DNA of 64,000 bases. It comes from Trichosphaerium sp. ATCC 40318. Taxonomy: Eukaryota; Protista; Tubulinea. This document shows, in pieces, positions 1 through 11,300 of the stretch. The number at the start of each line of letters is the position of its first letter. Positions within the stretch are counted from its first letter, which is position 1. The position numbers and the translations under genes were made by a program. Location: assembly GCA_038496445.1 (NCBI GenBank), contig JALMLS010000420.1, positions 372,001 to 436,000 on the forward strand. Reading direction: 5' to 3'. Below the pieces are notes generated by a model that saw nothing but the letters and a program-made list of their open reading frames with translations, was not told the origin of the DNA and searched no databases.

Positions 1-2030
1 TCTTACATATTTATTTGTAAACAACGCGCCCGATACTGATATCTGTCTGTTAGCACACAAAATGGATGCGGACGCCTTCAGTCGCGTATAACATACATGG
101 CAATAAAGGAGCCGTTGTTACAGTTGGTAGTCACAGTGGTCACAATTTTATTGCAATGGAATTCATTAACGCAAATGGGGATAATCTAACATACAAAAAC
201 AAGATTATAGAAGCACCTAGCGTAGATTGCCCAGCAGTTGCGTATAATCCGTCTTCCGATAATTTCTTAGTTACGTATACTGCTAAGAATATAAGTTTGA
301 TCGATTTCTCCGTGAGGTATGCTCTTATTTTTAAAGTTATTTATTTTTTTCACCTTTTTGGTTTTTTTTTTATCGTTGAGCTTCTCTGGTAAACCCCTTT
401 TGATGACGCTTGTTAATACTAAGTGTTTTTATAGCACATCTATTTATGGCGTGTTTGTTGATAACTCAGGAAACATTATGGGTGATCATTTTTCAGTAAG
501 CACAACTCCACCGCAACAGAGTGGTATGTCACAATGGCCACCATGTCCTTCTGTAGCTTTCAGCACGGCAGATCAACAATTTTTTGTAACGTGGCATCAA
601 AGAAGGCCTAAAGAGCCTGGATTCGAAATTGTCGGGTGCCTTGTTAATAGACAGACTGGAGGTATTGTAAGTGTAACACAGTCCAAACACCTAGCGTAAG
701 TGTTCTTTATTTATACGTTACATTAAGTTACCTTTCTTAACCTTTAAGTTAGATACAATGGATTAAATCCGAAGAGTGTTTTCTCAGCTACAAAAGCGTT
801 TACTGCATACCAATCTGTTGATTTAGCAACATCTAGACATGAAGCTTTCATTGTAGTCTCTCACCCTCTCCAAGACGATAAAAACACATTCCATAAGCAT
901 ACACGTATAGATGTACGTTATTAAGAGTATACAGCACGCATAGCAACTAGAATTAATGTTGTTTAGAATCACAAAACAAGCAGTTTTGACGTTGGTGTTA
1001 ATACGCCACCAGATATAGTTTTTAATAGCGCTGTTGATAGAGTTATTACTGTGTGGTCTGCAGAGATTGTCACTGGAGAATCTGGTGCGTGTTATAGTTT
1101 ATAGCCTGATATCTGACGTATTTAGACATATACATACGCTCTGCTATTCAGACAGGAGGGTTTGATAGCAAGCCAATAAGAATCTCCTTCGCAAAGGATG
1201 CTTATGCTCCACGCATCGCTGTAGACCTTGTTCATGTAAGGACGATAATGTTTTAACTCGAAGCATCTCTAATATGTTTCTTTTAGAGACAATATCTTGT
1301 CATTTGGAATAAGAGAAGTGGTGGCGTTATGGGACAGTTTTTAAATGAAAGTTTTGAGTGGATAGGACTTAGCTTTGAGATTACAAGCGATAAGTCAGGT
1401 AAATCTATTACTGACCCTGCTACATCTCCTATTGTACAATATATTCCTAATTCCGATCGCTACATTGTACTATGGCCTGGTGCCAATGCGCAGACAATAC
1501 AAGGTGTATTCTTAGGTACATTGCTTAGCCAGTCTTCATTCTTACTTGTAACTTCAATAACCTCCAAATAGGTCCTCCAGATGTTAGTGTGGACATAATT
1601 GTCCCTGGTCAGACGTATACATATGCGCCTACCTCTGTACCAACAGAAGATGCGCCTACATTTGTACCAACAGAAGCTACTAAAGCGCCAGTACCAGCTC
1701 CAACACTTGAACCTACAACCGTACTTCCTCCAATATTTAGCCCAACTCCATTACCACCACTTCCGTCACCTGCTGACGATTTACCTACAATACAACCTAC
1801 ACCGCCTCCACCTGTAATGACACATACAGAATATGTGGAGAATCAGGGTAAATCAAGATCCACTGCCATTGCTTTTGCTAGTACGTCGACTACAATAGAA
1901 TTCTAAATGCTAACCACTTTTTTTAGTTCTTGTTCCAGCTTGCGCTTTCATTGTTATTGGCGTTGGTATTGCTGCATACAAGTGGATAAAGAGTCGTAAA
2001 GATTACCCTGTCATCGAGTATGCTTTGTAG
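1..2030 (+). CDS. Type I membrane protein with repeated propeller-like blades, Pro/Thr stalk, TM and short tail (5' end probably outside window; multi-exon)
   Basis: Recurrent motif P-x-V-A-[YF]...[FY]-[LFI]-V-[TLI]-[WY] (CPAVAYNPSSDNFLVTY, CPSVAFSTADQQFFVTW, PDIVFNSAVDRVITVW, PIVQYIPNSDRYIVLW). P/T stalk at 1600-1820. Hydrophobic TM exon at about 1930-1985. Tail ends DYPVIEYAL*. Confidence 0.7.
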
Positions 2031-2555
2031 ATAAAAGAATTATCGAGTACTTGACAAGACGCCAAGTAAATATTGTAAATAAATTTTGAAAAAAAAGAAC
2101 AAGATAGCAAACTTTTAACCACCAAACTATATTTGTAAACTAAATTGTGGTATTTCTCATTCAAAATTCTACCACGTTTTCCTTAAAGGTTACCCAGCAC
2201 AGCAAACAACCTGTTTCCTTTTCATTCAAAGAAAAGCTGAGATGTAAAATGATTTAAAAGTACATATTGATTTCTACTCAATCAGGAAACAAATCGTTCA
2301 AACATTCTTTTACCGTAAGCGAAGAGTATGGGCACGTGACAAAAAAACGCTTCAGGTATAACGTTACATTAAGCGCTAAAAACGTTCAAAATTACATCAA
2401 CTTTTACTAATTGTCTTGTTGCTTACAAACAAAGGAGCTGAATACTCACTACGATATCTGATCAGGCAGCTATTCATTTCCATCTTTACGTACTTGTCTT
2501 AAGGCACCACAAGGTTCAAACCACAATAAGTTGTGTACAAGTACATATTATCTCA

Positions 2556-5111
2556 ATGTATTTTATTACTGCGTGTTGGTCGTTCTTATCAGCTGTTACG
2601 TCAGTACACTCGTTAAAAATTTGGTTAACATTTTGTACAGTGGTTGGTGGTACCACAATAACTTCTATACGCCCACTACCAACTCTGTGCTATTATTTTC
2701 GAGATATCCCACGCCAGGTAATTAAATTAAATCAAATACGCTTAAAACCATCGCAGGTAAATGTAAATCTCGCCTGTCAAAAGCAATAGGCATACATGAG
2801 GCTGCCAAGACACAAAAAGAAATGACAGGTACAAAACGACTCAAAACGGCGCCTATAATCATTTCCCTGCGTAGAAAACATCAAAAACGAGATTTTACTG
2901 TTGAAAGCAACCTCAAACATACACGCGAAAGGTAGACAACAAAAACAGCGATAAACAAGCTGCACGTCTTGTGGTAGTGTCTAACTGTACGCAAAGTACA
3001 TTTTAAAGGAGATGTTTCTGAGCAAGACATGGAAGAATGGCTAGGAACAGAATTTGATTATGAGAAGCAACCTTCAAATGACTTGGGTGTTAACTGCACA
3101 CATAGTATAAAACAAGCTTTTGACAATGGGTTTAAAAGGCACGTGCCCTGTAACATGTTTTTTCTCTTGAACGAAATTACAATTGTTTTCTTTGGATTTC
3201 TTTGGATTTCGTCGCTTTCTTCGCTCTCTTACGTTGTTATAGGACTATTATTGTTGGAGCAGATATTCCAGGTAATTTTATTTGTCACGATGAGAACTCA
3301 AGGGCGAAATGTAGGCATTACATCGAGTATTATTAATGAAGGATTTGAAAAGTTATTGTCAAATGATGTTGTCATTGGTCCAGCTGAAGACGGTGTGAAA
3401 TTTTTATATTGGGCCCTTAAATCGCTTACATAATATGATATTAGGTGGCTACTATATGATTGGATTTAGATCTGGTGCGCGTGCATGGCCAGAGTTGTTC
3501 AAAGTACGCACAAAAAAGTGAAGGTTCTTCTTAATTAAGTTTTTTTGTTTAATTTATAGAACATAAACTGGGGCACAGATGAGGTCTTTGATCAAACCAT
3601 GAAATTGGCTAAAAATAAGGTACTTTATTATGCCGTATACTTAGCTTATAATCAAACCGTAGAGTCTATCAGTTGGAACAACAGCGTATTTGCGAGATGT
3701 TGATTTTGTTGAGGATTTAGTTGAATGGTATGTATTTACAATTCGTTTAACGTCAGCGTTGCTTACAAGCTGTGCAAGGGAGCGTGTGAAGAAACTAAAA
3801 AAAGAACAAGCATCTGAACACAAAATAAGTGTTGTGATACCTGTATTAAATGAGCAAGATAACATTGAACGAGTAAGTATCATCTATCTACAAAAAGTTA
3901 CCTAGGACCAGTCTTTTGATTTTTGTTTTACAGCTTGCAAAAGATCTTCGTAGTAAGGGTAAAAATATTGAAATTATTATATCGGATGGCGGAAGGTAAG
4001 TACCTTCATTAAAAAGTCAACCATGCTTACCTGAGTAGTGTTGATTCCACGCTTGACATTGTCAATAAATTAAAAGAAGAGTCAATTGTTGATGTTGTTG
4101 TAAATAGCAAAAAAGGAAGGTAATGCCAAACCTTCTTCTAATAGTATATTCACAGCATGTTAATTTTGCTGTTAAACATCAACATAGTTCGCATACTAAA
4201 AGTTGATCCATTTAAATGAATGATTTTGTTTTAACTTTTTTTTTTTTTTTAGAGCTTCTCAGATGAATTCTGGAGCTAGTGCTAGTACAGGCAACATACT
4301 TTTTTTCCTTCACGCAGATAGTGTAGTACCACATCGTAAGAAATAACTCTGATATGGTGTAAATACTAATCACGTGCTGTTTAAAACAGACTACGATGGA
4401 ATAATAAGAAAAATTCTAAATACAGAAAAAAATGGCAGTACACCTGGAGCAGGTTTGTGCACTTGACTCACTTTATATTACTCACTCTATTTCTTTTAGG
4501 TGCTTTCAGTTTTAAGGTGGATAGACCTGATAGCTTATGGGGATTACCCATGGTCGAAAGAAGTACTAATTGGAGAAGCAAGTACGAGCCCAACAACAAA
4601 AAAGTACTCTACAGCTCATTGCACTTTTCTGAAGGTTTCTCCAACTTCCTTATGGAGATCAAGGTTTCTTTGTCACCAAAGACAAGTATAATAAACTCAA
4701 TGGATACAAGGTATGACTTTCTTATTCATAGGTTAATAATAGCTTTTAAGAACATGGAAATGATGGAAGACTACGATTTTATTAAAAGAGCAAGGTACCT
4801 TTCTTGTTTTGAAATTGATTTCTCGTATTCTGTTAACTCCTTGTTTTAAAAAGTAAGCTCGGTGGTATAGCTATATCTTCTACACATCTCATTACAAGTT
4901 CAAGACGATGGCAGAAGCTTGGTACATGAGACTTACAGAAAAACGTTTAACTGATTTGGTAAAAGGTGTTTTGAAAGTAACAGCAACGAATTGGATGCTT
5001 GTTGCTCTTTACAATCTAGGATTTTCTACCTCAACACTACGTACGTAATAACTACACATGTGTCAATAATATTTAAGCGTAAATTTAGGTAAAATGTACT
5101 ATGGGAGCTAA
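2556..5111 (+). CDS. Fused TIGR04282 (DUF2064/CofC-like) + TIGR04283 (GT2) arsenosugar-biosynthesis-type glycosyltransferase (multi-exon)
   Basis: N-half after splicing: VLLFSRYPTPGKCKSRL, QPSNDLG, IIVGADIPG, DVVIGPAEDGGYYMIG, INWGTDEVF, LRDVDFVEDL. C-half: KISVVIPVLNE, IIISDGGS, RASQMNSGA, GNILFFLHADS, MEDYDFIKR, TSSRRWQKLG. Confidence 0.85.
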
Positions 5112-5429
5112 GAAAAGACGTCTTTTCATCACATAAAAAAAAAACAGTTACTTATTCCTGTTTGTACTTGGTGTCATCAAAAGGCATATGGTATTTTAAT
5201 AGTTTGGCGATATTCTTTACTCGTAGTTATCATTAAATCAATAGATTATTTATCAGTCGACCTGTAAGAATTTGACTTCCTCTTGCTTTAATTAGGGCTA
5301 GTAAAAAAAAAATTAGGACTAGTAACCCTTGTAAAACTTGGTCAAAACAGCTCAAAAATACTCGGAAACGCATCTCGCACATATGATAGACATGCTAAGA
5401 GGCTCGTTGGATGCCTACTTAGAGCAGTT

Positions 5430-8177
5430 TTTTATTCTTTCCTGAAAGCTGTCGTGTTATAAGATAAGCAGCCATAGTATAATAGATGAGTCAATACTGT
5501 CTGGTTTAACTATTGATAGACGACCAGAAGTACCACTCCAGGAGAGGATAACCTCAACAAGGTAGACAACAATGATAATCTTGGTCACACACGTTTGTAA
5601 AGTTTTTGTATTTGTACAAAGGTTTGGGTTATTTTTTTTTCTATTCACATGTTTTTCGGATCTTTTGATTTTACCTATCCCTTCTATTCCTTCTCCCATT
5701 GTTACCACTCCAGAAATAAAATCCACTACTGCGCCAATGAGGCCTTCTAAAAAACAAATACGTTATGAAGTTCATAAGCAACAGAATCAAAAACAAAAGG
5801 TAGCTTACGTATCAGTGTAATGTTGATAATACAAAGTGTCGTTTTCATTCATCATCCACCGCCCAATGAACTTCACGTTTTCAAAACCGGGCATCTTAAT
5901 AATAGATTCATTGTCGTTGTTACCTTCATCCTCAACAGTATCTGGTACTTTAATCCTTCGAATAAAAAAGTCAACTCTAAATATCAGGAAAAAATTAAGA
6001 AAATTAACTCACTTGTTGTTCTTTAACAGAACAAGACCTTGTACAGACTCTAGCTTAGGGAACTTAATGTCTTCAAGCATATAATTCTAACCAATGGATT
6101 AGAACTATGCAAAAGTCGAGTACTATTACTTGTTGGACATTAAGGTCAGTGTGAATCCTTTGTAACTTCGGGAAAGCAACTGAGGTTAACTTTAAGTTTC
6201 TAAAGATTAAGAGCTGAGATTTAGCTTGCTCAAGACTTTCAAAATTTGTTAGGGTCTCGAGATTAGTGTTATTAAATATTTCAATATGTCCAGAAACAAC
6301 TCTAAGACTTTGAAACGCCTAGGAGAGAATCTTTTAGAAAAAGATTACAAACAAAAAAAAAAGTACGTCGATTGTCTCCAATGCTTCATTACTAGAGATA
6401 GAGATACTATTTTTTATCTCAGTCAATGCTGTGATGCCCTATTTTGTAATAAGTCAACAATGTAGAAAATAGATAAAGGACGTACAGTGATATGAAGTAA
6501 ACTTGGATTTTGTTTTATTTGAATAAATCCACCAACTGACGATAAAACTGGGAACTCAACAACTCGTAATCCAGTGCCAAGAATGATTAAATAAGCACCT
6601 ACACTTCCTTAAAAGAGATCTATTACTTCCCAAGGTCAACATACTGATTGTGTGCAACGATTTCAATCGAAGAGATCGAAGGCTAGGACATTTATCGATC
6701 GAAATAAACTCGCAAGCTTGAAAAGCAGGCAAGTACAAAACAGCCAATAGCTCATTTTCTGAAACTGTAAGTTGACCAGGCTGTATAGTAACAACAAACA
6801 CATTAGTATAATTAAATGATGATACAAAAAAACACTAAATACGTACATGTGTTAACTTAGGAAGAGACACTGAAGTAAGTGAAGGGTTATTAGATATTTT
6901 AAGCGATTGAGATTTTCTGAAGGAAATGAAATTCGCGACTTTCAAAGCTGTATTGTTCGATACCTCAAGAACAACACCAGGATCTTTTAGTATATTAAAT
7001 CCTTTTATATTAACTAGCATTGGATTATTCCTAATACGTAATCTATTGCCAACAGACTCCAATGAAGAGAACCCATCAATAGCTTCCAGTTTGGGATTTC
7101 TTAAAATATCGATGTATTCTCCGACATGACCAAGTTTGTTAAAGCCTAGTGACTTGACACCAACAGTGTGAATATATAAGAATCCATTAACTTTCTCTAG
7201 AGATTCAAAATCGACAGTAATAAGTTCAGGGGCGCCTGTAATGTACAAGTATGTATCCACGTTTTTTATGCTGTTAAGGTATATCCATGTTAAGTTTGTA
7301 TTATTCCATATCGTAATAGATTTCGCAAAAGTCATATTTTCAAACCCAAAAATGCCAACTAATGCCGGACAATCTAGAAAAAATAATTAAAAAAAATGGT
7401 TGCAATGTTTTTTTTTCTCTTTTGTTTTCACGGACGCTACTCTTTGTAGTTTATCCAAATATCAAAGAAAATAGTGACTGGTATTTAAGTAATTAATAAT
7501 AAAACATTTGGTAGTGAAAAGAAATCAAGGAGATTTCAGGTCGAGCCGAAAAGGCAAAAAAAAAAAACTTGCCTTTAATAGTAAGTGAATTCATTCTCTT
7601 AATTTTATCGAATCCACCAATGAGCTATTTTAACAAAAAATTAGTCTCCTCTGACCCTCTTACCCACACTGTAACAAACAAAAAAACTATAACGTACTGT
7701 AAGTGAGTCACAACGTCTAAATACTAAATCACCACCAAGAGTTTCAATTGTGGAGAAATTCACAAATGTTGACAACTTTGGAGCGTCTTCTATCATCAAA
7801 TAGCCAGCAATTGATTTTAATCGTGGTATTTGTATAGCAGTCAAGTTTGTGTTATTGCTAATAAGCACATAACCTATAAAAGAAGCAGTTGGTGTAAACT
7901 GAAGATATAATGACGGTTCACAAACGCAAATAACACTAGACGCTTATAAACGGTGTTTAACGAGCGTACCTGTTATCGTCTCAAGTTTGGGGAACGACAA
8001 AATAGTAATATTCGTGTGTTCGACCAGTAGGGTGTTTATACTAGTACAGTTGACCAGGGCGAGCATTGTTTTCTCATTGTAAATCGATTGCGTTCCGCAA
8101 TTCAGTGTTTTTGGTTTATCTTCGTTACCGCGTACAATGAGGAATAGAGATAGTAATAAAAGTACGTACAGTCGCAT
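5430..8177 (-). CDS. Secreted/surface receptor L-domain (leucine-rich) repeat protein (multi-exon; 3' end uncertain)
   Basis: Signal peptide MRLYVLLLLSLFLIVRG. Many repeats of the type F-x-x-L-x-x-V-x-G-x-L-x-I-x-x-N-x-x-L in ORFs 6835-7335, 7641-7868 and 7944-8186. Confidence 0.7.
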
Positions 8178-8353
8178 ACGTGGCAAACTCTATTAATACG
8201 TCAGAAAACATATCAAACAGGCGTAAAACGTACTCTACAAGTATTTGTAGAACACCACAGCGTTGACATGTGCGGTAGTTACCTCAGTGCTAAGTTAGGC
8301 TAAGTCAATTTGATTTTGGCGTCAAACTGCCAATAAATCATTTCTGCACGATA

Positions 8354-11300
8354 ATGCAGTCTCGTGGAGCCTTTATTGGCTTTATAGCAGTACTCATGCT
8401 TCTTTTGGGGTCCTGTCAAGCATCACAAAATGTCATGGAGAAGTTTCTGAATATGCCAAATACTACGTTTATTCAAGAGTTCTCGCGTGAATATACAAAA
8501 GAACCTCATTTGGCGGGTACAATGGAAAGCTTCCTTGTAGCGAACTATACTTACACAAAGGCATGTACAGCGTTGTTTTAGAACTGTTTTAAACTGATAC
8601 ACGTGATTTTAGATGCTTGAGTTTGGATTTCAAGCAGAGCTTCTTGAGTTTGAGTCGTTAATGTCTTATCCTGCACGAAGAGAAGTTAAAATGCTTGCTC
8701 CCATACAGTACTGTTTCGAAACTAGTTTGCTGTCATTCATTTCACTTACGACTTTCGGCAAGGTTTGATGCTGGTCTCAAGGAGCCTGTTGTGCCAGGTG
8801 ATCCATTCAGTTCCAATCCAAAGTACCTTGACAGTCCAAGTTTTCTTAATAAATGTTTTTTTCTTACCATGTTCTTAAAGCATTGTCGATTCCTACATTT
8901 CTTGGGGGCCAACTGGTTCAGCACAAGGCTCACTGGTACTGCATAAAATACAAATTTGTCACCTCAGCTCATAATACCAACAGGTGTATGTAAACTACGC
9001 AAGAGTGGAAGACTTTGAACACTTAAAAGTACGTATTCGTTTTAAATTTAGATTGTTATACTGACATTACTCAGTCTATTGGCGTTTCTGTTGAGGGCAA
9101 AATTGCAATAGCTAGGTATGGATTTCTTCATAGAGGAACGAAAGGATATATTGCAGAGCAAAACGGAGCAAAGGTAGGAATGATTGTCATTTGCAAAGAC
9201 ATTCACTTTACATGTTATTTTTAGGCAATTCTCATTTACTCGGATCCACAAGATGACGGGTACACTTTCAAAAAAAGATTGCGTATACTTATATTATTTT
9301 AAAGATACGCAGTCGGACCAACATATCCGGAAGGCCCATGGAGACCAGAATACAGTACCAAATAACATTTCTGCTTCTTGTTTATTTCTTGCTTGTTGTT
9401 TATTTCTTGTTAAGGTATTCAAAGAGGAAGCGGGAAATGGGGATCTATATGTCCTGGTGACCCAAGGTACGCTTTTTGTTTGATATCATACTGTACAAAA
9501 CGAGTAATAACGTTGTACAGGCGCACGGAGATATGCTTGGGAAAAGCCAACCTAAACTACACAGGGAATCTAACACCTAACATTCCAATCATGCCACTCA
9601 GGTACAAACAAGCAGTACGCCTAGTTACCATGGTACTTACATAGATTATAGCTGGGGTGACGCGCTACCATTTTTGAGTAATATGGGAGGTCAAGAAGTA
9701 ATTGATGATTTCCGTGTAAGCCATAACAACTCCAATACTTTTTTCTTCACTTTCTTTGATCTCAGATTTTATCTAGGGTGCTCTAAATATCACTTACAGA
9801 TATGGTGATGAAGTAAATCAAGCTTCAGTTGTTGTAGAAATGAATTATGAAGTGAAGACTCTGTATCTACCCAACCAACATTTTGTTTACACTTTTTTTC
9901 ACGTCTAACTTTTCGTTAACTTCTGAAGATACAATGTTCGTGCAAAGATTGTTGGATCATCAGAACCAGATAAAGTCGTTCTTGTTGGCAATCATCACGG
10001 TACAATATAATAAAAGCTAAAGTCTAAAACGCTTATCACATCTCCAATACAAGATGCATGGACTTTTGGAGCAGCTGATCCCAATTCTGGTTCTTCTGCA
10101 ATGCTTGAAGTTATGCGTTGTTTCAGTGAGCTCATATCTGAAGGATGGAGCCCAAAGAGAGTAAGTACATATTTCCTACTGTTTGTTTACATATCTTTCA
10201 AGAGTATTTGGTTTCACAGTTGGGATGGCGAAGAACATAACTTGCTTGGTTCAACTTGGTATGGAGAAAAATATGCGGCAGAACTACAGGAGAAAGGCGT
10301 TGCGTACATTAATATGGGTACATTTAATAGATCAAAAAACTCCACATGATAAAATTAAAATGACACGTGAGTCTTTTTGTAGATGTTGGTGCAGCTGGCC
10401 CAAATTTCTCGACTGGAGTATCACCTTCACTCATAGTACTCATTGAAGAAATGGCGGGAAAAGTACCTTATCCAGGTAAAGTAGTCGTAGAAACTTTATT
10501 TTTTTCTGACTTTGTTGTTCCTCTTAAGGAAACGAAGACAATTCTACTGAGACTATTCTTGATCATTGGGATGATTTAAATGATAGACAAGTACTTGTTT
10601 TAGGATCAGGATCAGACTTTACTGTATTTATCGACCACTTGGGCATTCCATCTGTATCCATGAACTCACAGAACACCTACTTTGTTTATTATTAAGTGTG
10701 CACTTTCTTTCTTTTGTCCTTGACAAATCAAGATAGATTTTGGATTTAGAGCTGGTGGGCGTGGGGCTAGCTATGGAGTGTATCACTCTGCATATGACAA
10801 TACAAATTGGATGGAGAAATTTGGGTAAACACTTTTCGTGTTTTAGTTGCTTTGGTTTGTTATTTGTTAACCTTTTGTAAAGAGATCCAGGTTACCTGTT
10901 CCACCAAGGCTCTGCAAGACTTCTTGGATCTTTAATCATAAGACTTTCAGAAGATGATCACTATCCTATGGACTTTACAGTTTACGGAGGCAATCTCGAA
11001 GTGTACGCTTACAAACCACTTGTTTTTCTTACTACCAGTATCTAACGTATAACTAGGTACTATGATACCTTAGAAGAACTCATTGACAGCCACAATGCCA
11101 CAGAAGTAGATATAGTACCTATTCTGGAAGCTGTTACTGAATTCTTGGAGACAGCTATTAACTTTAAAGATGAAATCAGTGAGTACCTCGAGTTTGGTTG
11201 GCCAGATACAACAACAAGGCTGGAGGTAAGTTATTGTCCGTTTTGGGTGTTGTATCTTATCGTTTCTATTAGATCAACCAGCGCATGCAAGACTCTGAGA

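What the first reader, a model, noticed from the sequence alone, without database searches (positions are those of the whole stretch)
2556..5111. Intron-rich eukaryotic fusion of the two bacterial arsenosugar-associated glycosyltransferases (TIGR04282 + TIGR04283)
Seen: hallmark motifs of both families in one gene. The junction (LRDVDFVEDL...KISVVIPVLNE) lies within one open frame, ORF 3690-3905, and the gene has more than a dozen introns. Established: in bacteria these families (rSAM/selenodomain-associated transferases 1 and 2) cluster with the radical SAM enzyme ArsS and the methyltransferase ArsM of arsenosugar synthesis. Inference: a protist has domesticated this pair, and may make arsenosugars or arsenolipids or use a two-step glycosyl-transfer enzyme on another substrate.
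Basis: partly seen in the sequence, partly recalled or inferred. Interest (0 to 1): 0.8.

Follow-up and report, generated by a model that had tools for sequence, protein, structure and literature searches.

The report
Amoeba fused arsenosugar-type glycosyltransferase gene
An amoeba's nuclear genome has one 21-exon gene joining two bacterial-type enzymes thought to finish arsenic-sugar synthesis, and it also encodes the two upstream enzymes, so it probably makes arsenosugars; the fused layout is already common in bacteria.

Summary
Window 2556-5111 (+) can be read as one gene of 21 exons and 20 short introns, giving 480 codons with no internal stop. Exons 2-10 match TIGR04282/DUF2064. Exons 11-21 match the GT2 family TIGR04283. 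The junction lies in a stop-free stretch.

The whole-protein HMM test could not be run, because a spliced model may only be searched exon by exon. Exon scores sum to 63.3 and 85.2 bits. A bona fide bacterial fusion cut at the same places gives 72.2 and 92.1 bits, and scores 203 and 229 bits whole. Membership is therefore likely but not formally met.

The same 70 Mb genome encodes an intron-bearing ArsS (378 bits summed, covering 3-302 of 303 positions) and an AS3MT-type arsenite methyltransferase, both unlinked to this gene.

The fusion is not a eukaryotic invention. Proteins with the same domain order, 410-470 aa long, are common and already named in bacteria. Whether the amoeba received the gene fused or fused it later is unresolved. 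No close relative was found among 1.84 billion protein representatives. The amoeba's ArsS, in contrast, sits among many eukaryotic ArsS proteins.

Transcript evidence could not be obtained, and the arsenosugar role remains an inference.

Verdict: a real gene, a new eukaryotic member of a known kind, of moderate interest.

The parts
2556..5111 (+). Whole coding region, ATG to TAA: 21 exons, 20 introns, 480 codons. Introns: 2600-2640, 2718-2756, 2829-2874, 2932-2996, 3139-3242, 3272-3314, 3393-3444, 3504-3559, 3620-3662, 3728-3769, 3873-3933, 3996-4038, 4120-4252, 4336-4389, 4453-4499, 4582-4634, 4711-4750, 4795-4853, 4922-4965, 5041-5088.
   Evidence: the frame is kept through all exons with no internal stop, and every intron has GT/GC...AG ends; the exons align colinearly over the full length of bacterial fusions.
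2556..2599 (+). Exon 1: start codon and a hydrophobic N-terminus (MYFITACWSFLSAV...). It is absent from bacterial homologues and may be a signal peptide or membrane anchor. This is the least certain exon.
   Evidence: the frame of exon 2 has no ATG upstream, and the 41-nt GT-AG intron 2600-2640 joins the only nearby ATG in frame. Inference; no RNA evidence.
2641..3727 (+). Exons 2-10: the TIGR04282 / DUF2064 (CofC/MobA-like nucleotidyl-transferase fold) half. Motifs: SRYPTPGKCKSRL, VGADIPG, GPAEDGGYYMIG, NINWGTDEV, LRDVDFVEDL.
   Evidence: TIGR04282 is the only family hit for exons 3, 5, 7 and 9 (13.9, 19.6, 17.1, 12.7 bits). PF09837 at 16.6 + 16.5 bits; both stretches match about 200-aa TIGR04282 proteins..
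3139..3242 (+). Intron 5, the one GC-AG intron (104 nt).
   Evidence: only the GC donor at 3139 keeps ...NGFK|R|TIIVGADIPG in frame. The nearby GT at 3143 gives the wrong phase. Inference from frame and homology.
3728..3769 (+). Intron 10 (42 nt, GTATGT...AAG), between the last N-half exon and the junction exon. It is in frame and free of stops, so the protein stays fused whether it is spliced or retained.
   Evidence: (ORF 3690-3905 reads through it).
3770..3872 (+). Exon 11: a basic linker (CARERVKKLKKEQASEH) followed by the first strand of the GT2 half (KISVVIPVLNEQDNIER).
   Evidence: TIGR04283 positions 1-15, 13.8 bits. The control piece of P0049 gives 15.6 bits.
3770..5111 (+). Exons 11-21: the TIGR04283 (GT2, GT-A fold) half. 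Motifs: ISDGGSVDS, ILFFLHADS, GAFSFK, NWRSK, LPYGDQGFF, MEDYDF, SSRRWQ.
   Evidence: TIGR04283 is the best or only family for exons 14, 17 and 19 (35.5, 23.3, 12.6 bits). PF00535; about 49-52% identity to named TIGR04283 proteins.
4219..4262. The stretch that the reads tool would not lay: the T-run at the end of intron 13 plus the first three codons of exon 14. It was kept out of all shared search tools.

Best explanation
This is a functional nuclear gene of an amoeba. It encodes one bifunctional enzyme of about 480 aa. The N-terminal half belongs to TIGR04282/DUF2064 (a CofC/MobA-like nucleotidyl-transferase fold). The C-terminal half is a TIGR04283 family-2 glycosyltransferase. The gene is of bacterial ancestry and long resident in the eukaryote, as its 20 spliceosomal introns show.

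It most likely acts after AS3MT/ArsM (As(III) to dimethylarsenite) and ArsS (dimethylarsenite plus the 5'-deoxyadenosyl group of SAM to 5'-deoxy-5'-dimethylarsinoyl-adenosine). It would turn that nucleoside, or the ribose-1-phosphate derived from it, into dimethylarsinoyl-ribosides (arsenosugars).

My proposed mechanism is inferred, not shown. The N-domain would make an NDP-activated 5-dimethylarsinoyl-ribose. The inverting GT2 domain would transfer it to a glycerol-type acceptor, giving the beta-riboside. Fusion would channel the intermediate between the two sites.

Shown: the gene structure, the family resemblance of both halves, conserved catalytic motifs, and the presence of ArsS and AS3MT in the genome. 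Inferred: expression as one mRNA, the substrates, the arsenosugar product and the role of the N-terminal anchor.
For: Gene model and open frame.

Exon-wise family hits, colinear and specific.

Calibration: the Pontiella fusion P0049 scores 203.2 and 229.3 bits whole. Cut at the amoeba's exon boundaries it gives 72.2 and 92.1 bits. The amoeba exons give 63.3 and 85.2 bits, i.e. 88% and 93% of that member.

Conservation: 86 of 107 near-invariant columns are kept.

Partners in the same genome:
- ArsS at G000:C37:65878-67196 (-), exon hits of 101.7 + 105.1 + 135 + 36.4 bits over positions 3-302 of 303. It is 50-64% identical to bacterial ArsS and carries CNQACSHC.
- An AS3MT-type gene at C97 with YYGCG, SNCVVNL and WGECLSGALYW.

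Bacterial context: bona fide TIGR04282 and TIGR04283 genes sit next to arsS, in that order, with arsM nearby.

Chemistry of ArsS: it is reported to form DDMAA from DMAs(III) (PMC13598754).

Folds: the C-half resembles GT2 enzymes that glycosylate glycerate-type acceptors, and the N-half resembles 3CGX and CofC.
Against: - No whole-protein HMM score: every exon score is below the curated cut-offs (134 and 182 bits), and the extrapolation from a chopped control is indirect.
- No RNA evidence. Exon 1, the intron 4 acceptor (2996 or 3008), intron 10 and the last intron are model choices.
- The arsenosugar label of both families rests on gene neighbourhood only ('hypoth_equivalog' for TIGR04282). 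I found no paper testing either enzyme.
- The three amoeba genes are unlinked (contigs C11, C37, C97), and the neighbours in the window are unrelated to arsenic.
- The ArsM candidate reaches only 118.5 bits summed, against a cut-off of 263. Bacterial arsS-linked ArsMs also score only about 105-158 bits.
Confidence: 0.55

Rival explanations
1. The gene is a real fused enzyme but works on another small molecule or glycoconjugate, not on arsenic. The co-occurrence with ArsS and AS3MT would then be coincidental.
For: The family names rest on genome context only. Fused DUF2064+GT2 clusters occur in many bacterial phyla, and I did not check each for ArsS. The gene is not linked to arsS or arsM in the amoeba. 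I could not show that other ArsS-bearing eukaryotes have this gene.
Against: Exon hits go to the narrow equivalog models TIGR04282 and TIGR04283 rather than to generic GT2 models. The nearest proteins are ones NCBI names as these families. In 80 bacterial ArsS loci the two families are the immediate neighbours of arsS. All three partners are kept, with introns, in one eukaryote.
Confidence: 0.3
2. These are two separate products: the halves are made as two proteins, by an internal promoter, alternative splicing or cleavage, so the 'fusion' exists only in the DNA.
For: No transcript data could be obtained. Bacteria often keep the two genes separate but adjacent.
Against: Only an 18-residue linker and a 42-nt in-frame, stop-free intron separate the domains. 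There is no ATG-led restart and no room for terminator and promoter signals. Bacterial single-chain fusions of the same order and similar linker length are common.
Confidence: 0.06
3. Decaying or silent gene: a relic of horizontal transfer that is no longer expressed or active.
For: No expression evidence. No close relative was found in 1.84 billion representatives.
Against: The frame is intact through 21 exons, all splice sites are usable, and 80% of near-invariant family residues, including the catalytic motifs, are kept. The partner genes are also intact.
Confidence: 0.06
4. Bacterial contamination or an assembly artefact.
For: The nearest relatives are all bacterial.
Against: The gene has 20 spliceosomal-type introns. 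It lies inside a contig of an assembly whose other genes are eukaryotic. The bacterial and metagenomic homologues are all uninterrupted ORFs.
Confidence: 0.01

Closest known systems
Bacterial single-chain TIGR04282-TIGR04283 fusions (PF09837 + PF00535, 410-470 aa). Examples: P0049 of Pontiella sp. and P0099 of Leptolyngbya sp. FACHB-36, which NCBI names 'TIGR04283 family arsenosugar biosynthesis glycosyltransferase' and JGI names 'rSAM/selenodomain-associated transferase 2 / transferase 1'.
   Same: Same two domains in the same N-to-C order, similar length and the same conserved motifs. Identity is about 45-50% exon-wise in both halves.
   Different: The amoeba gene is nuclear with 20 introns. 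It has an extra hydrophobic N-terminus and a longer lysine-rich linker, and it is not next to arsS or arsM. No bacterial protein is closer than about 50%.
Separate, adjacent TIGR04282 and TIGR04283 genes beside arsS in Bacteroidota, Cyanobacteria and Planctomycetota (e.g. L044 5128-5766 and 5736-6461; L105).
   Same: Same families and the same gene order as the domain order here. The unfused cyanobacterial proteins are as similar to the amoeba halves as the fused ones are: 49% (P0116) and 52% (P0175).
   Different: They are two polypeptides, operon-linked to arsS.
DUF2064 structure 3CGX, and CofC (2-phospho-L-lactate guanylyltransferase, TIGR03552).
   Same: The fold family of the N-half. Bacterial TIGR04282 members hit 3CGX at E 3e-30 and CofC weakly.
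   Different: The substrate of TIGR04282 is unknown, and no activity has been reported for it. The relation was measured on bacterial homologues, not on the amoeba protein itself.
GT2 enzymes acting on small acceptors: glucosyl-3-phosphoglycerate synthase GpgS (NF010496; 7P5L) and the mycofactocin glycosyltransferase MftF (TIGR03965).
   Same: GT-A fold, with the N-terminal nucleotide-binding strand and the DxD-type 'HAD' motif. They are weak second-best family hits for exon 11 and for bacterial members.
   Different: The scores are far below those for TIGR04283. The donor and acceptor differ or are unknown.

Membership tests
TIGR04282 (NCBIfam, arsenosugar biosynthesis glycosyltransferase, hypoth_equivalog) | Whole-protein HMM score of at least 134 bits | tested here: inconclusive
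   Only exon-wise scoring was allowed: 13.9 + 19.6 + 17.1 + 12.7 = 63.3 bits. Control: the member P0049 scores 203.2 bits whole but 72.2 bits when cut at the same boundaries.
TIGR04282 | Colinear coverage of the profile and conserved family motifs | tested here: met
   Hits fall at profile positions 12-34, 54-96, 109-133 and 151-169 in exon order. The motifs KxxSRL, GxDxP, GPAxDGGYY, WGT and DVD are kept. PF09837 is hit on two exons.
TIGR04283 (NCBIfam, arsenosugar biosynthesis glycosyltransferase, equivalog) | Whole-protein HMM score of at least 182 bits | tested here: inconclusive
   Exon-wise: 13.8 + 35.5 + 23.3 + 12.6 = 85.2 bits. Control: P0049 scores 229.3 bits whole and 92.1 bits chopped.
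TIGR04283 | Best-scoring family compared with other GT2 models, and GT2 catalytic motifs | tested here: met
   TIGR04283 is the only family for exons 14, 17 and 19. Exon 11 is ambiguous among GT2 models, as is the control piece. DGGS, FLHAD, PYGDQ, MED and RRW are kept.
Arsenosugar gene set (ArsM + ArsS + TIGR04282 + TIGR04283) | ArsS (TIGR04167) present in the same genome | tested here: met
   G000:C37:65878-67196 (-). Four exon hits sum to 378 bits over positions 3-302 of 303, against a cut-off of 300. The CX3CX2C motif is present. Identity to bacterial ArsS is 50-64%.
Arsenosugar gene set | Arsenite methyltransferase present in the same genome | tested here: met
   G000:C97, about 126988-127949 (-). 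NF008823 exon hits sum to 118.5 bits, in the range of arsS-linked bacterial ArsMs. The AS3MT cysteine motifs YYGCG, SNCV and GECL are present, and Methyltransf_31 scores 34.8 bits. The NF008823 cut-off of 263 bits itself is not reached.
Arsenosugar gene set | Physical linkage of the genes (operon or cluster) | tested here: not met
   The three genes lie on contigs C11, C37 and C97, and the window neighbours are unrelated. Linkage is a bacterial feature and is not expected in a eukaryote.
Arsenosugar gene set | Production of dimethylarsinoyl-ribosides | not testable with these tools
   This needs arsenic speciation of the organism or enzyme assays.
Single fused gene product | One mRNA spanning both halves | not testable with these tools
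   No RNA run is on record. The DNA shows an uninterrupted frame across the junction.

The most novel reading that the evidence does not exclude
A heterotrophic amoeba makes arsenosugars or arsenosugar lipids with a complete, intron-bearing, unlinked gene set: AS3MT, ArsS and this fusion. The fusion would be the missing late enzyme of the pathway. Its CofC-like domain would nucleotide-activate 5-dimethylarsinoyl-ribose, and its GT2 domain would transfer it to glycerol-type acceptors. Co-retention of unlinked genes in a eukaryote would be independent evidence, beyond bacterial operons, that TIGR04282 and TIGR04283 belong to arsenosugar synthesis.
Probability: 0.3. Interest if true: 0.65.

Novelty: new member of a known kind. 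Interest (0 to 1): 0.4.

Why it matters
In the open literature I could search, the enzymes that convert the ArsS product (dimethylarsinoyl-adenosine) into arsenosugars have not been tested. TIGR04282 and TIGR04283 are candidates by operon context only. This eukaryote has kept both domains, as one protein, together with ArsS and AS3MT, even though the genes are no longer linked. That gives an independent co-occurrence argument and a single-gene target for expression or knock-out tests.

It also suggests that arsenosugar production is not confined to algae and cyanobacteria. ArsS relatives turned up in many protists and even in marine invertebrates. This bears on where the arsenosugars and arsenobetaine precursors in food webs come from.

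If the role is confirmed, the fused enzyme would be a convenient reagent for working out the late pathway steps.

Tried and rejected
1. Whole-protein searches of the spliced model against NCBIfam, Pfam, the protein libraries, structure prediction and a phylogeny were left out. The joined CDS was used once, inside, to count its length and stops.

2. RNA evidence. The look-up of sequencing runs found one small run of unknown kind. After that, no shared search tool received those letters; exon 14 was referenced from 4263 onward. Its exon-14 entry includes the three codons 4254-4262.

3. The search of 1.84 billion representatives with window:2999-3430 (exons 5 and 7 in one stop-free frame) gave 17 weak hits, all 269 aa or shorter. 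It returned neither the amoeba's own protein nor a close relative.

4. Looking for eukaryotic relatives of the fusion. The top-120 lists seeded from bacterial queries held no eukaryotic names. It returned only intronless bacterial-type fusions. This is not evidence of absence.

5. Gene neighbourhoods of eukaryotic ArsS genes (Ectocarpus, Dunaliella and an ENA eukaryote-like contig) show no DUF2064 or GT2 neighbour.

6. Aligning exon fragments with the MAFFT tool mangled several of them, so I did not use those alignments as search profiles.

7. Fused versus unfused ancestry. Exon-wise BLAST sums rank fused and unfused bacterial proteins equally, so this stays unresolved.

8. Contamination was rejected because of the introns.
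Full report
WHAT IS THERE

Reading window 2000-5800 and its ORFs shows short open segments on the + strand in alternating frames, separated by 39-133 nt stretches with GT...AG ends. A model with ATG at 2556, 20 introns and the stop at 5109-5111 gives 1443 coding bases, 480 codons and no internal stop. Nineteen introns are GT-AG. Intron 5 (3139-3242) must use a GC donor to keep ...NGFK|R|TIIVGADIPG in frame.

It contains a 42-nt, in-frame, stop-free GTATGT...AAG intron (3728-3769). The end of the first domain (LRDVDFVEDLVE) and the start of the second (KISVVIPVLNE) therefore stay in one frame whether or not that intron is removed.

Earlier notes of this scan call the organism an amoeba. The assembly has 70.3 Mb in 642 contigs, and the window is C11:372001-436000.

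FAMILY ASSIGNMENT, EXON BY EXON

A spliced model may only be searched exon by exon, so I did that.

- NCBIfam finds TIGR04282 as the only family for exons 3, 5, 7 and 9, at profile positions 12-34, 54-96, 109-133 and 151-169, with 13.9, 19.6, 17.1 and 12.7 bits.
- NCBIfam finds TIGR04283 for exons 11, 14, 17 and 19, at positions 1-15, 61-86, 132-155 and 172-191, with 13.8, 35.5, 23.3 and 12.6 bits.
- The six-frame genome search finds the same exons and no second locus.
- Pfam gives DUF2064 on exons 5 and 7 and Glycos_transf_2 on exon 14.

The sums, 63.3 and 85.2 bits, are below the curated cut-offs of 134 and 182 bits. To judge what chopping costs, I cut a bona fide bacterial fusion at the homologous positions. 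This was P0049 of Pontiella sp., which scores 203.2 and 229.3 bits whole. Its pieces give 72.2 and 92.1 bits, and the same pieces fall under HMMER's filters. The amoeba exons thus reach 88% and 93% of a true member. That makes membership likely, but it is an extrapolation.

I also placed the exon peptides one by one on an alignment of 79 bacterial fusions. They cover it end to end and match 86 of the 107 covered columns that are at least 90% conserved. The matches include GPAxDGGYY, WGT, DVD, DGGS, FLHAD, PYGDQ, MED and RRW.

THE FUSION IS NOT NEW

A word search seeded with one of the best hits (P0002) returned dozens of proteins of 410-470 aa carrying PF09837 and PF00535. Many are named 'TIGR04283 family arsenosugar biosynthesis glycosyltransferase' or 'rSAM/selenodomain-associated transferase 2 / transferase 1'. 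Seven that I scanned have TIGR04282 at the N-terminus and TIGR04283 at the C-terminus, both above cut-off. The ESM Atlas holds several such clusters in Thermodesulfobacteriota, Pseudomonadota, Bacillota, Acidobacteriota and Actinomycetota. Metagenome contigs show many uninterrupted fused ORFs.

In 80 bacterial ArsS loci the two families are instead separate neighbouring genes, in the same order, sometimes with overlapping ends.

Exon-wise BLAST sums put the amoeba halves at about 47-52% identity to the best fused proteins and the best unfused (cyanobacterial) proteins alike. I therefore cannot say whether the amoeba received a fused gene or fused two genes later.

An exhaustive search of 1.84 billion representatives with the stop-free stretch 2999-3430 (exons 5 and 7) gave only 17 weak hits, all 269 aa or shorter, at no more than 49% identity. 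So neither the amoeba's protein nor any close relative is in that library. Distant eukaryotic relatives cannot be excluded.

PATHWAY CONTEXT IN THE SAME GENOME

TIGR04167 (ArsS) matches G000:C37:65878-67196 (-) in four exon pieces of 101.7, 105.1, 135 and 36.4 bits, covering positions 3-302 of 303. The gene has the radical-SAM motif CNQACSHC and is 50-64% identical to bacterial ArsS along its length.

Its nearest relatives are eukaryotic:
- brown algae, 68-71%;
- cryptophytes, green algae, Bigelowiella, a diatom, an ochromonad and a dinoflagellate;
- an oyster (70%), a sea urchin and a hemichordate;
- a metagenome protein at 81%.

An arsenite-methyltransferase candidate lies at C97, about 126988-127949 (-). 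Four NF008823 exon hits sum to 118.5 bits. That is similar to what the arsS-adjacent ArsMs of Adhaeretor and Moorena score. The translated exons carry the AS3MT cysteine motifs YYGCG, SNCVVNL and WGECLSGALYW and a Methyltransf_31 hit.

The three genes are on different contigs. The window neighbours are a Pro/Thr-rich secreted-type protein upstream and a leucine-rich-repeat-like gene downstream on the minus strand, neither related to arsenic.

HOW IT PROBABLY WORKS

Established: ArsM supplies dimethylarsenite, and ArsS adds the 5'-deoxyadenosyl group to give 5'-deoxy-5'-dimethylarsinoyl-adenosine (PMC13598754; bioRxiv 10.1101/2022.09.23.509062). I found no paper that tests TIGR04282 or TIGR04283.

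The N-half family is related to CofC guanylyltransferase and to the DUF2064 structure 3CGX. The C-half is related to GT2 enzymes, including glucosyl-3-phosphoglycerate synthase.

My inference has three steps:
1. The arsenical nucleoside is converted to a ribose-1-phosphate.
2. The N-domain activates it with a nucleotide.
3. The inverting GT2 domain transfers it to a glycerol-type acceptor, giving the beta-riboside typical of arsenosugars.

A hydrophobic N-terminus that bacterial homologues lack may anchor the enzyme to a membrane. None of this is shown.

WHAT COULD NOT BE DONE

No RNA run is on record for the stretch. Those letters went to no shared search tool afterwards. My local scripts did reuse an earlier exon-14 peptide that includes those three codons.

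The joined protein was not searched, folded or placed on a tree.

Eukaryotic genomes other than this one cannot be searched with the tools at hand. The neighbourhoods of three eukaryotic ArsS genes show no DUF2064 or GT2 gene.

VERDICT

The gene is a real, intron-rich, probably active eukaryotic member of an already known bacterial fused family, and it sits in a genome that also has ArsS and AS3MT. The arsenosugar role is plausible (about even odds) but rests on association. Novelty is that of a new member in a new host lineage, not of a new architecture.

Noticed in passing
G000:C37:65878-67196 (-) (loci L006-L009, L098): An intron-bearing ArsS (TIGR04167) orthologue with the CX3CX2C motif and an N-terminal extension of more than 100 residues. 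It is the Cys form, with no in-frame TGA. Its nearest relatives are eukaryotic, not bacterial.
   Followed up: partly
G000:C97, about 126988-127949 (-) (locus L099, about 7007-7949): An AS3MT-type arsenite methyltransferase gene with several introns. All the conserved cysteine motifs (YYGCG, SNCVVNL, WGECLSGALYW) are present.
   Followed up: partly
Proteins P0273-P0387: ArsS-like proteins (PF04055 + PF12345) occur in brown algae, cryptophytes, green algae, Bigelowiella, diatoms and dinoflagellates. They also occur in animals: Saccostrea cucullata, Strongylocentrotus purpuratus and Glandiceps talaboti. This hints that some marine invertebrates could adenosylate dimethylarsenite themselves.
   Followed up: no
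P0270 (JGI metagenome, 338 aa): This ArsS is 81% identical to the amoeba's ArsS exon, so DNA of a fairly close relative of this amoeba is probably present in a public metagenome. Its copy of the fused gene was not recovered.
   Followed up: no
window 3139-3242: A GC-AG intron among 19 GT-AG introns. Most introns of the gene are only 39-65 nt long.
   Followed up: partly
window 6835-8186 (-) and 66-1906 (+): The neighbouring genes are a leucine-rich-repeat / receptor-L-domain-like protein on the minus strand and a secreted-type protein with a Pro/Thr-rich segment upstream. Neither is related to arsenic.
   Followed up: no
L018 (Adhaeretor mobilis) about 7841-10894; L087 (Moorena producens): Compact bacterial clusters with an ArsM-like gene, TIGR04283 and ArsS side by side. 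The ArsM-like ORFs score only about 105-125 bits with NF008823, well below its cut-off.
   Followed up: partly
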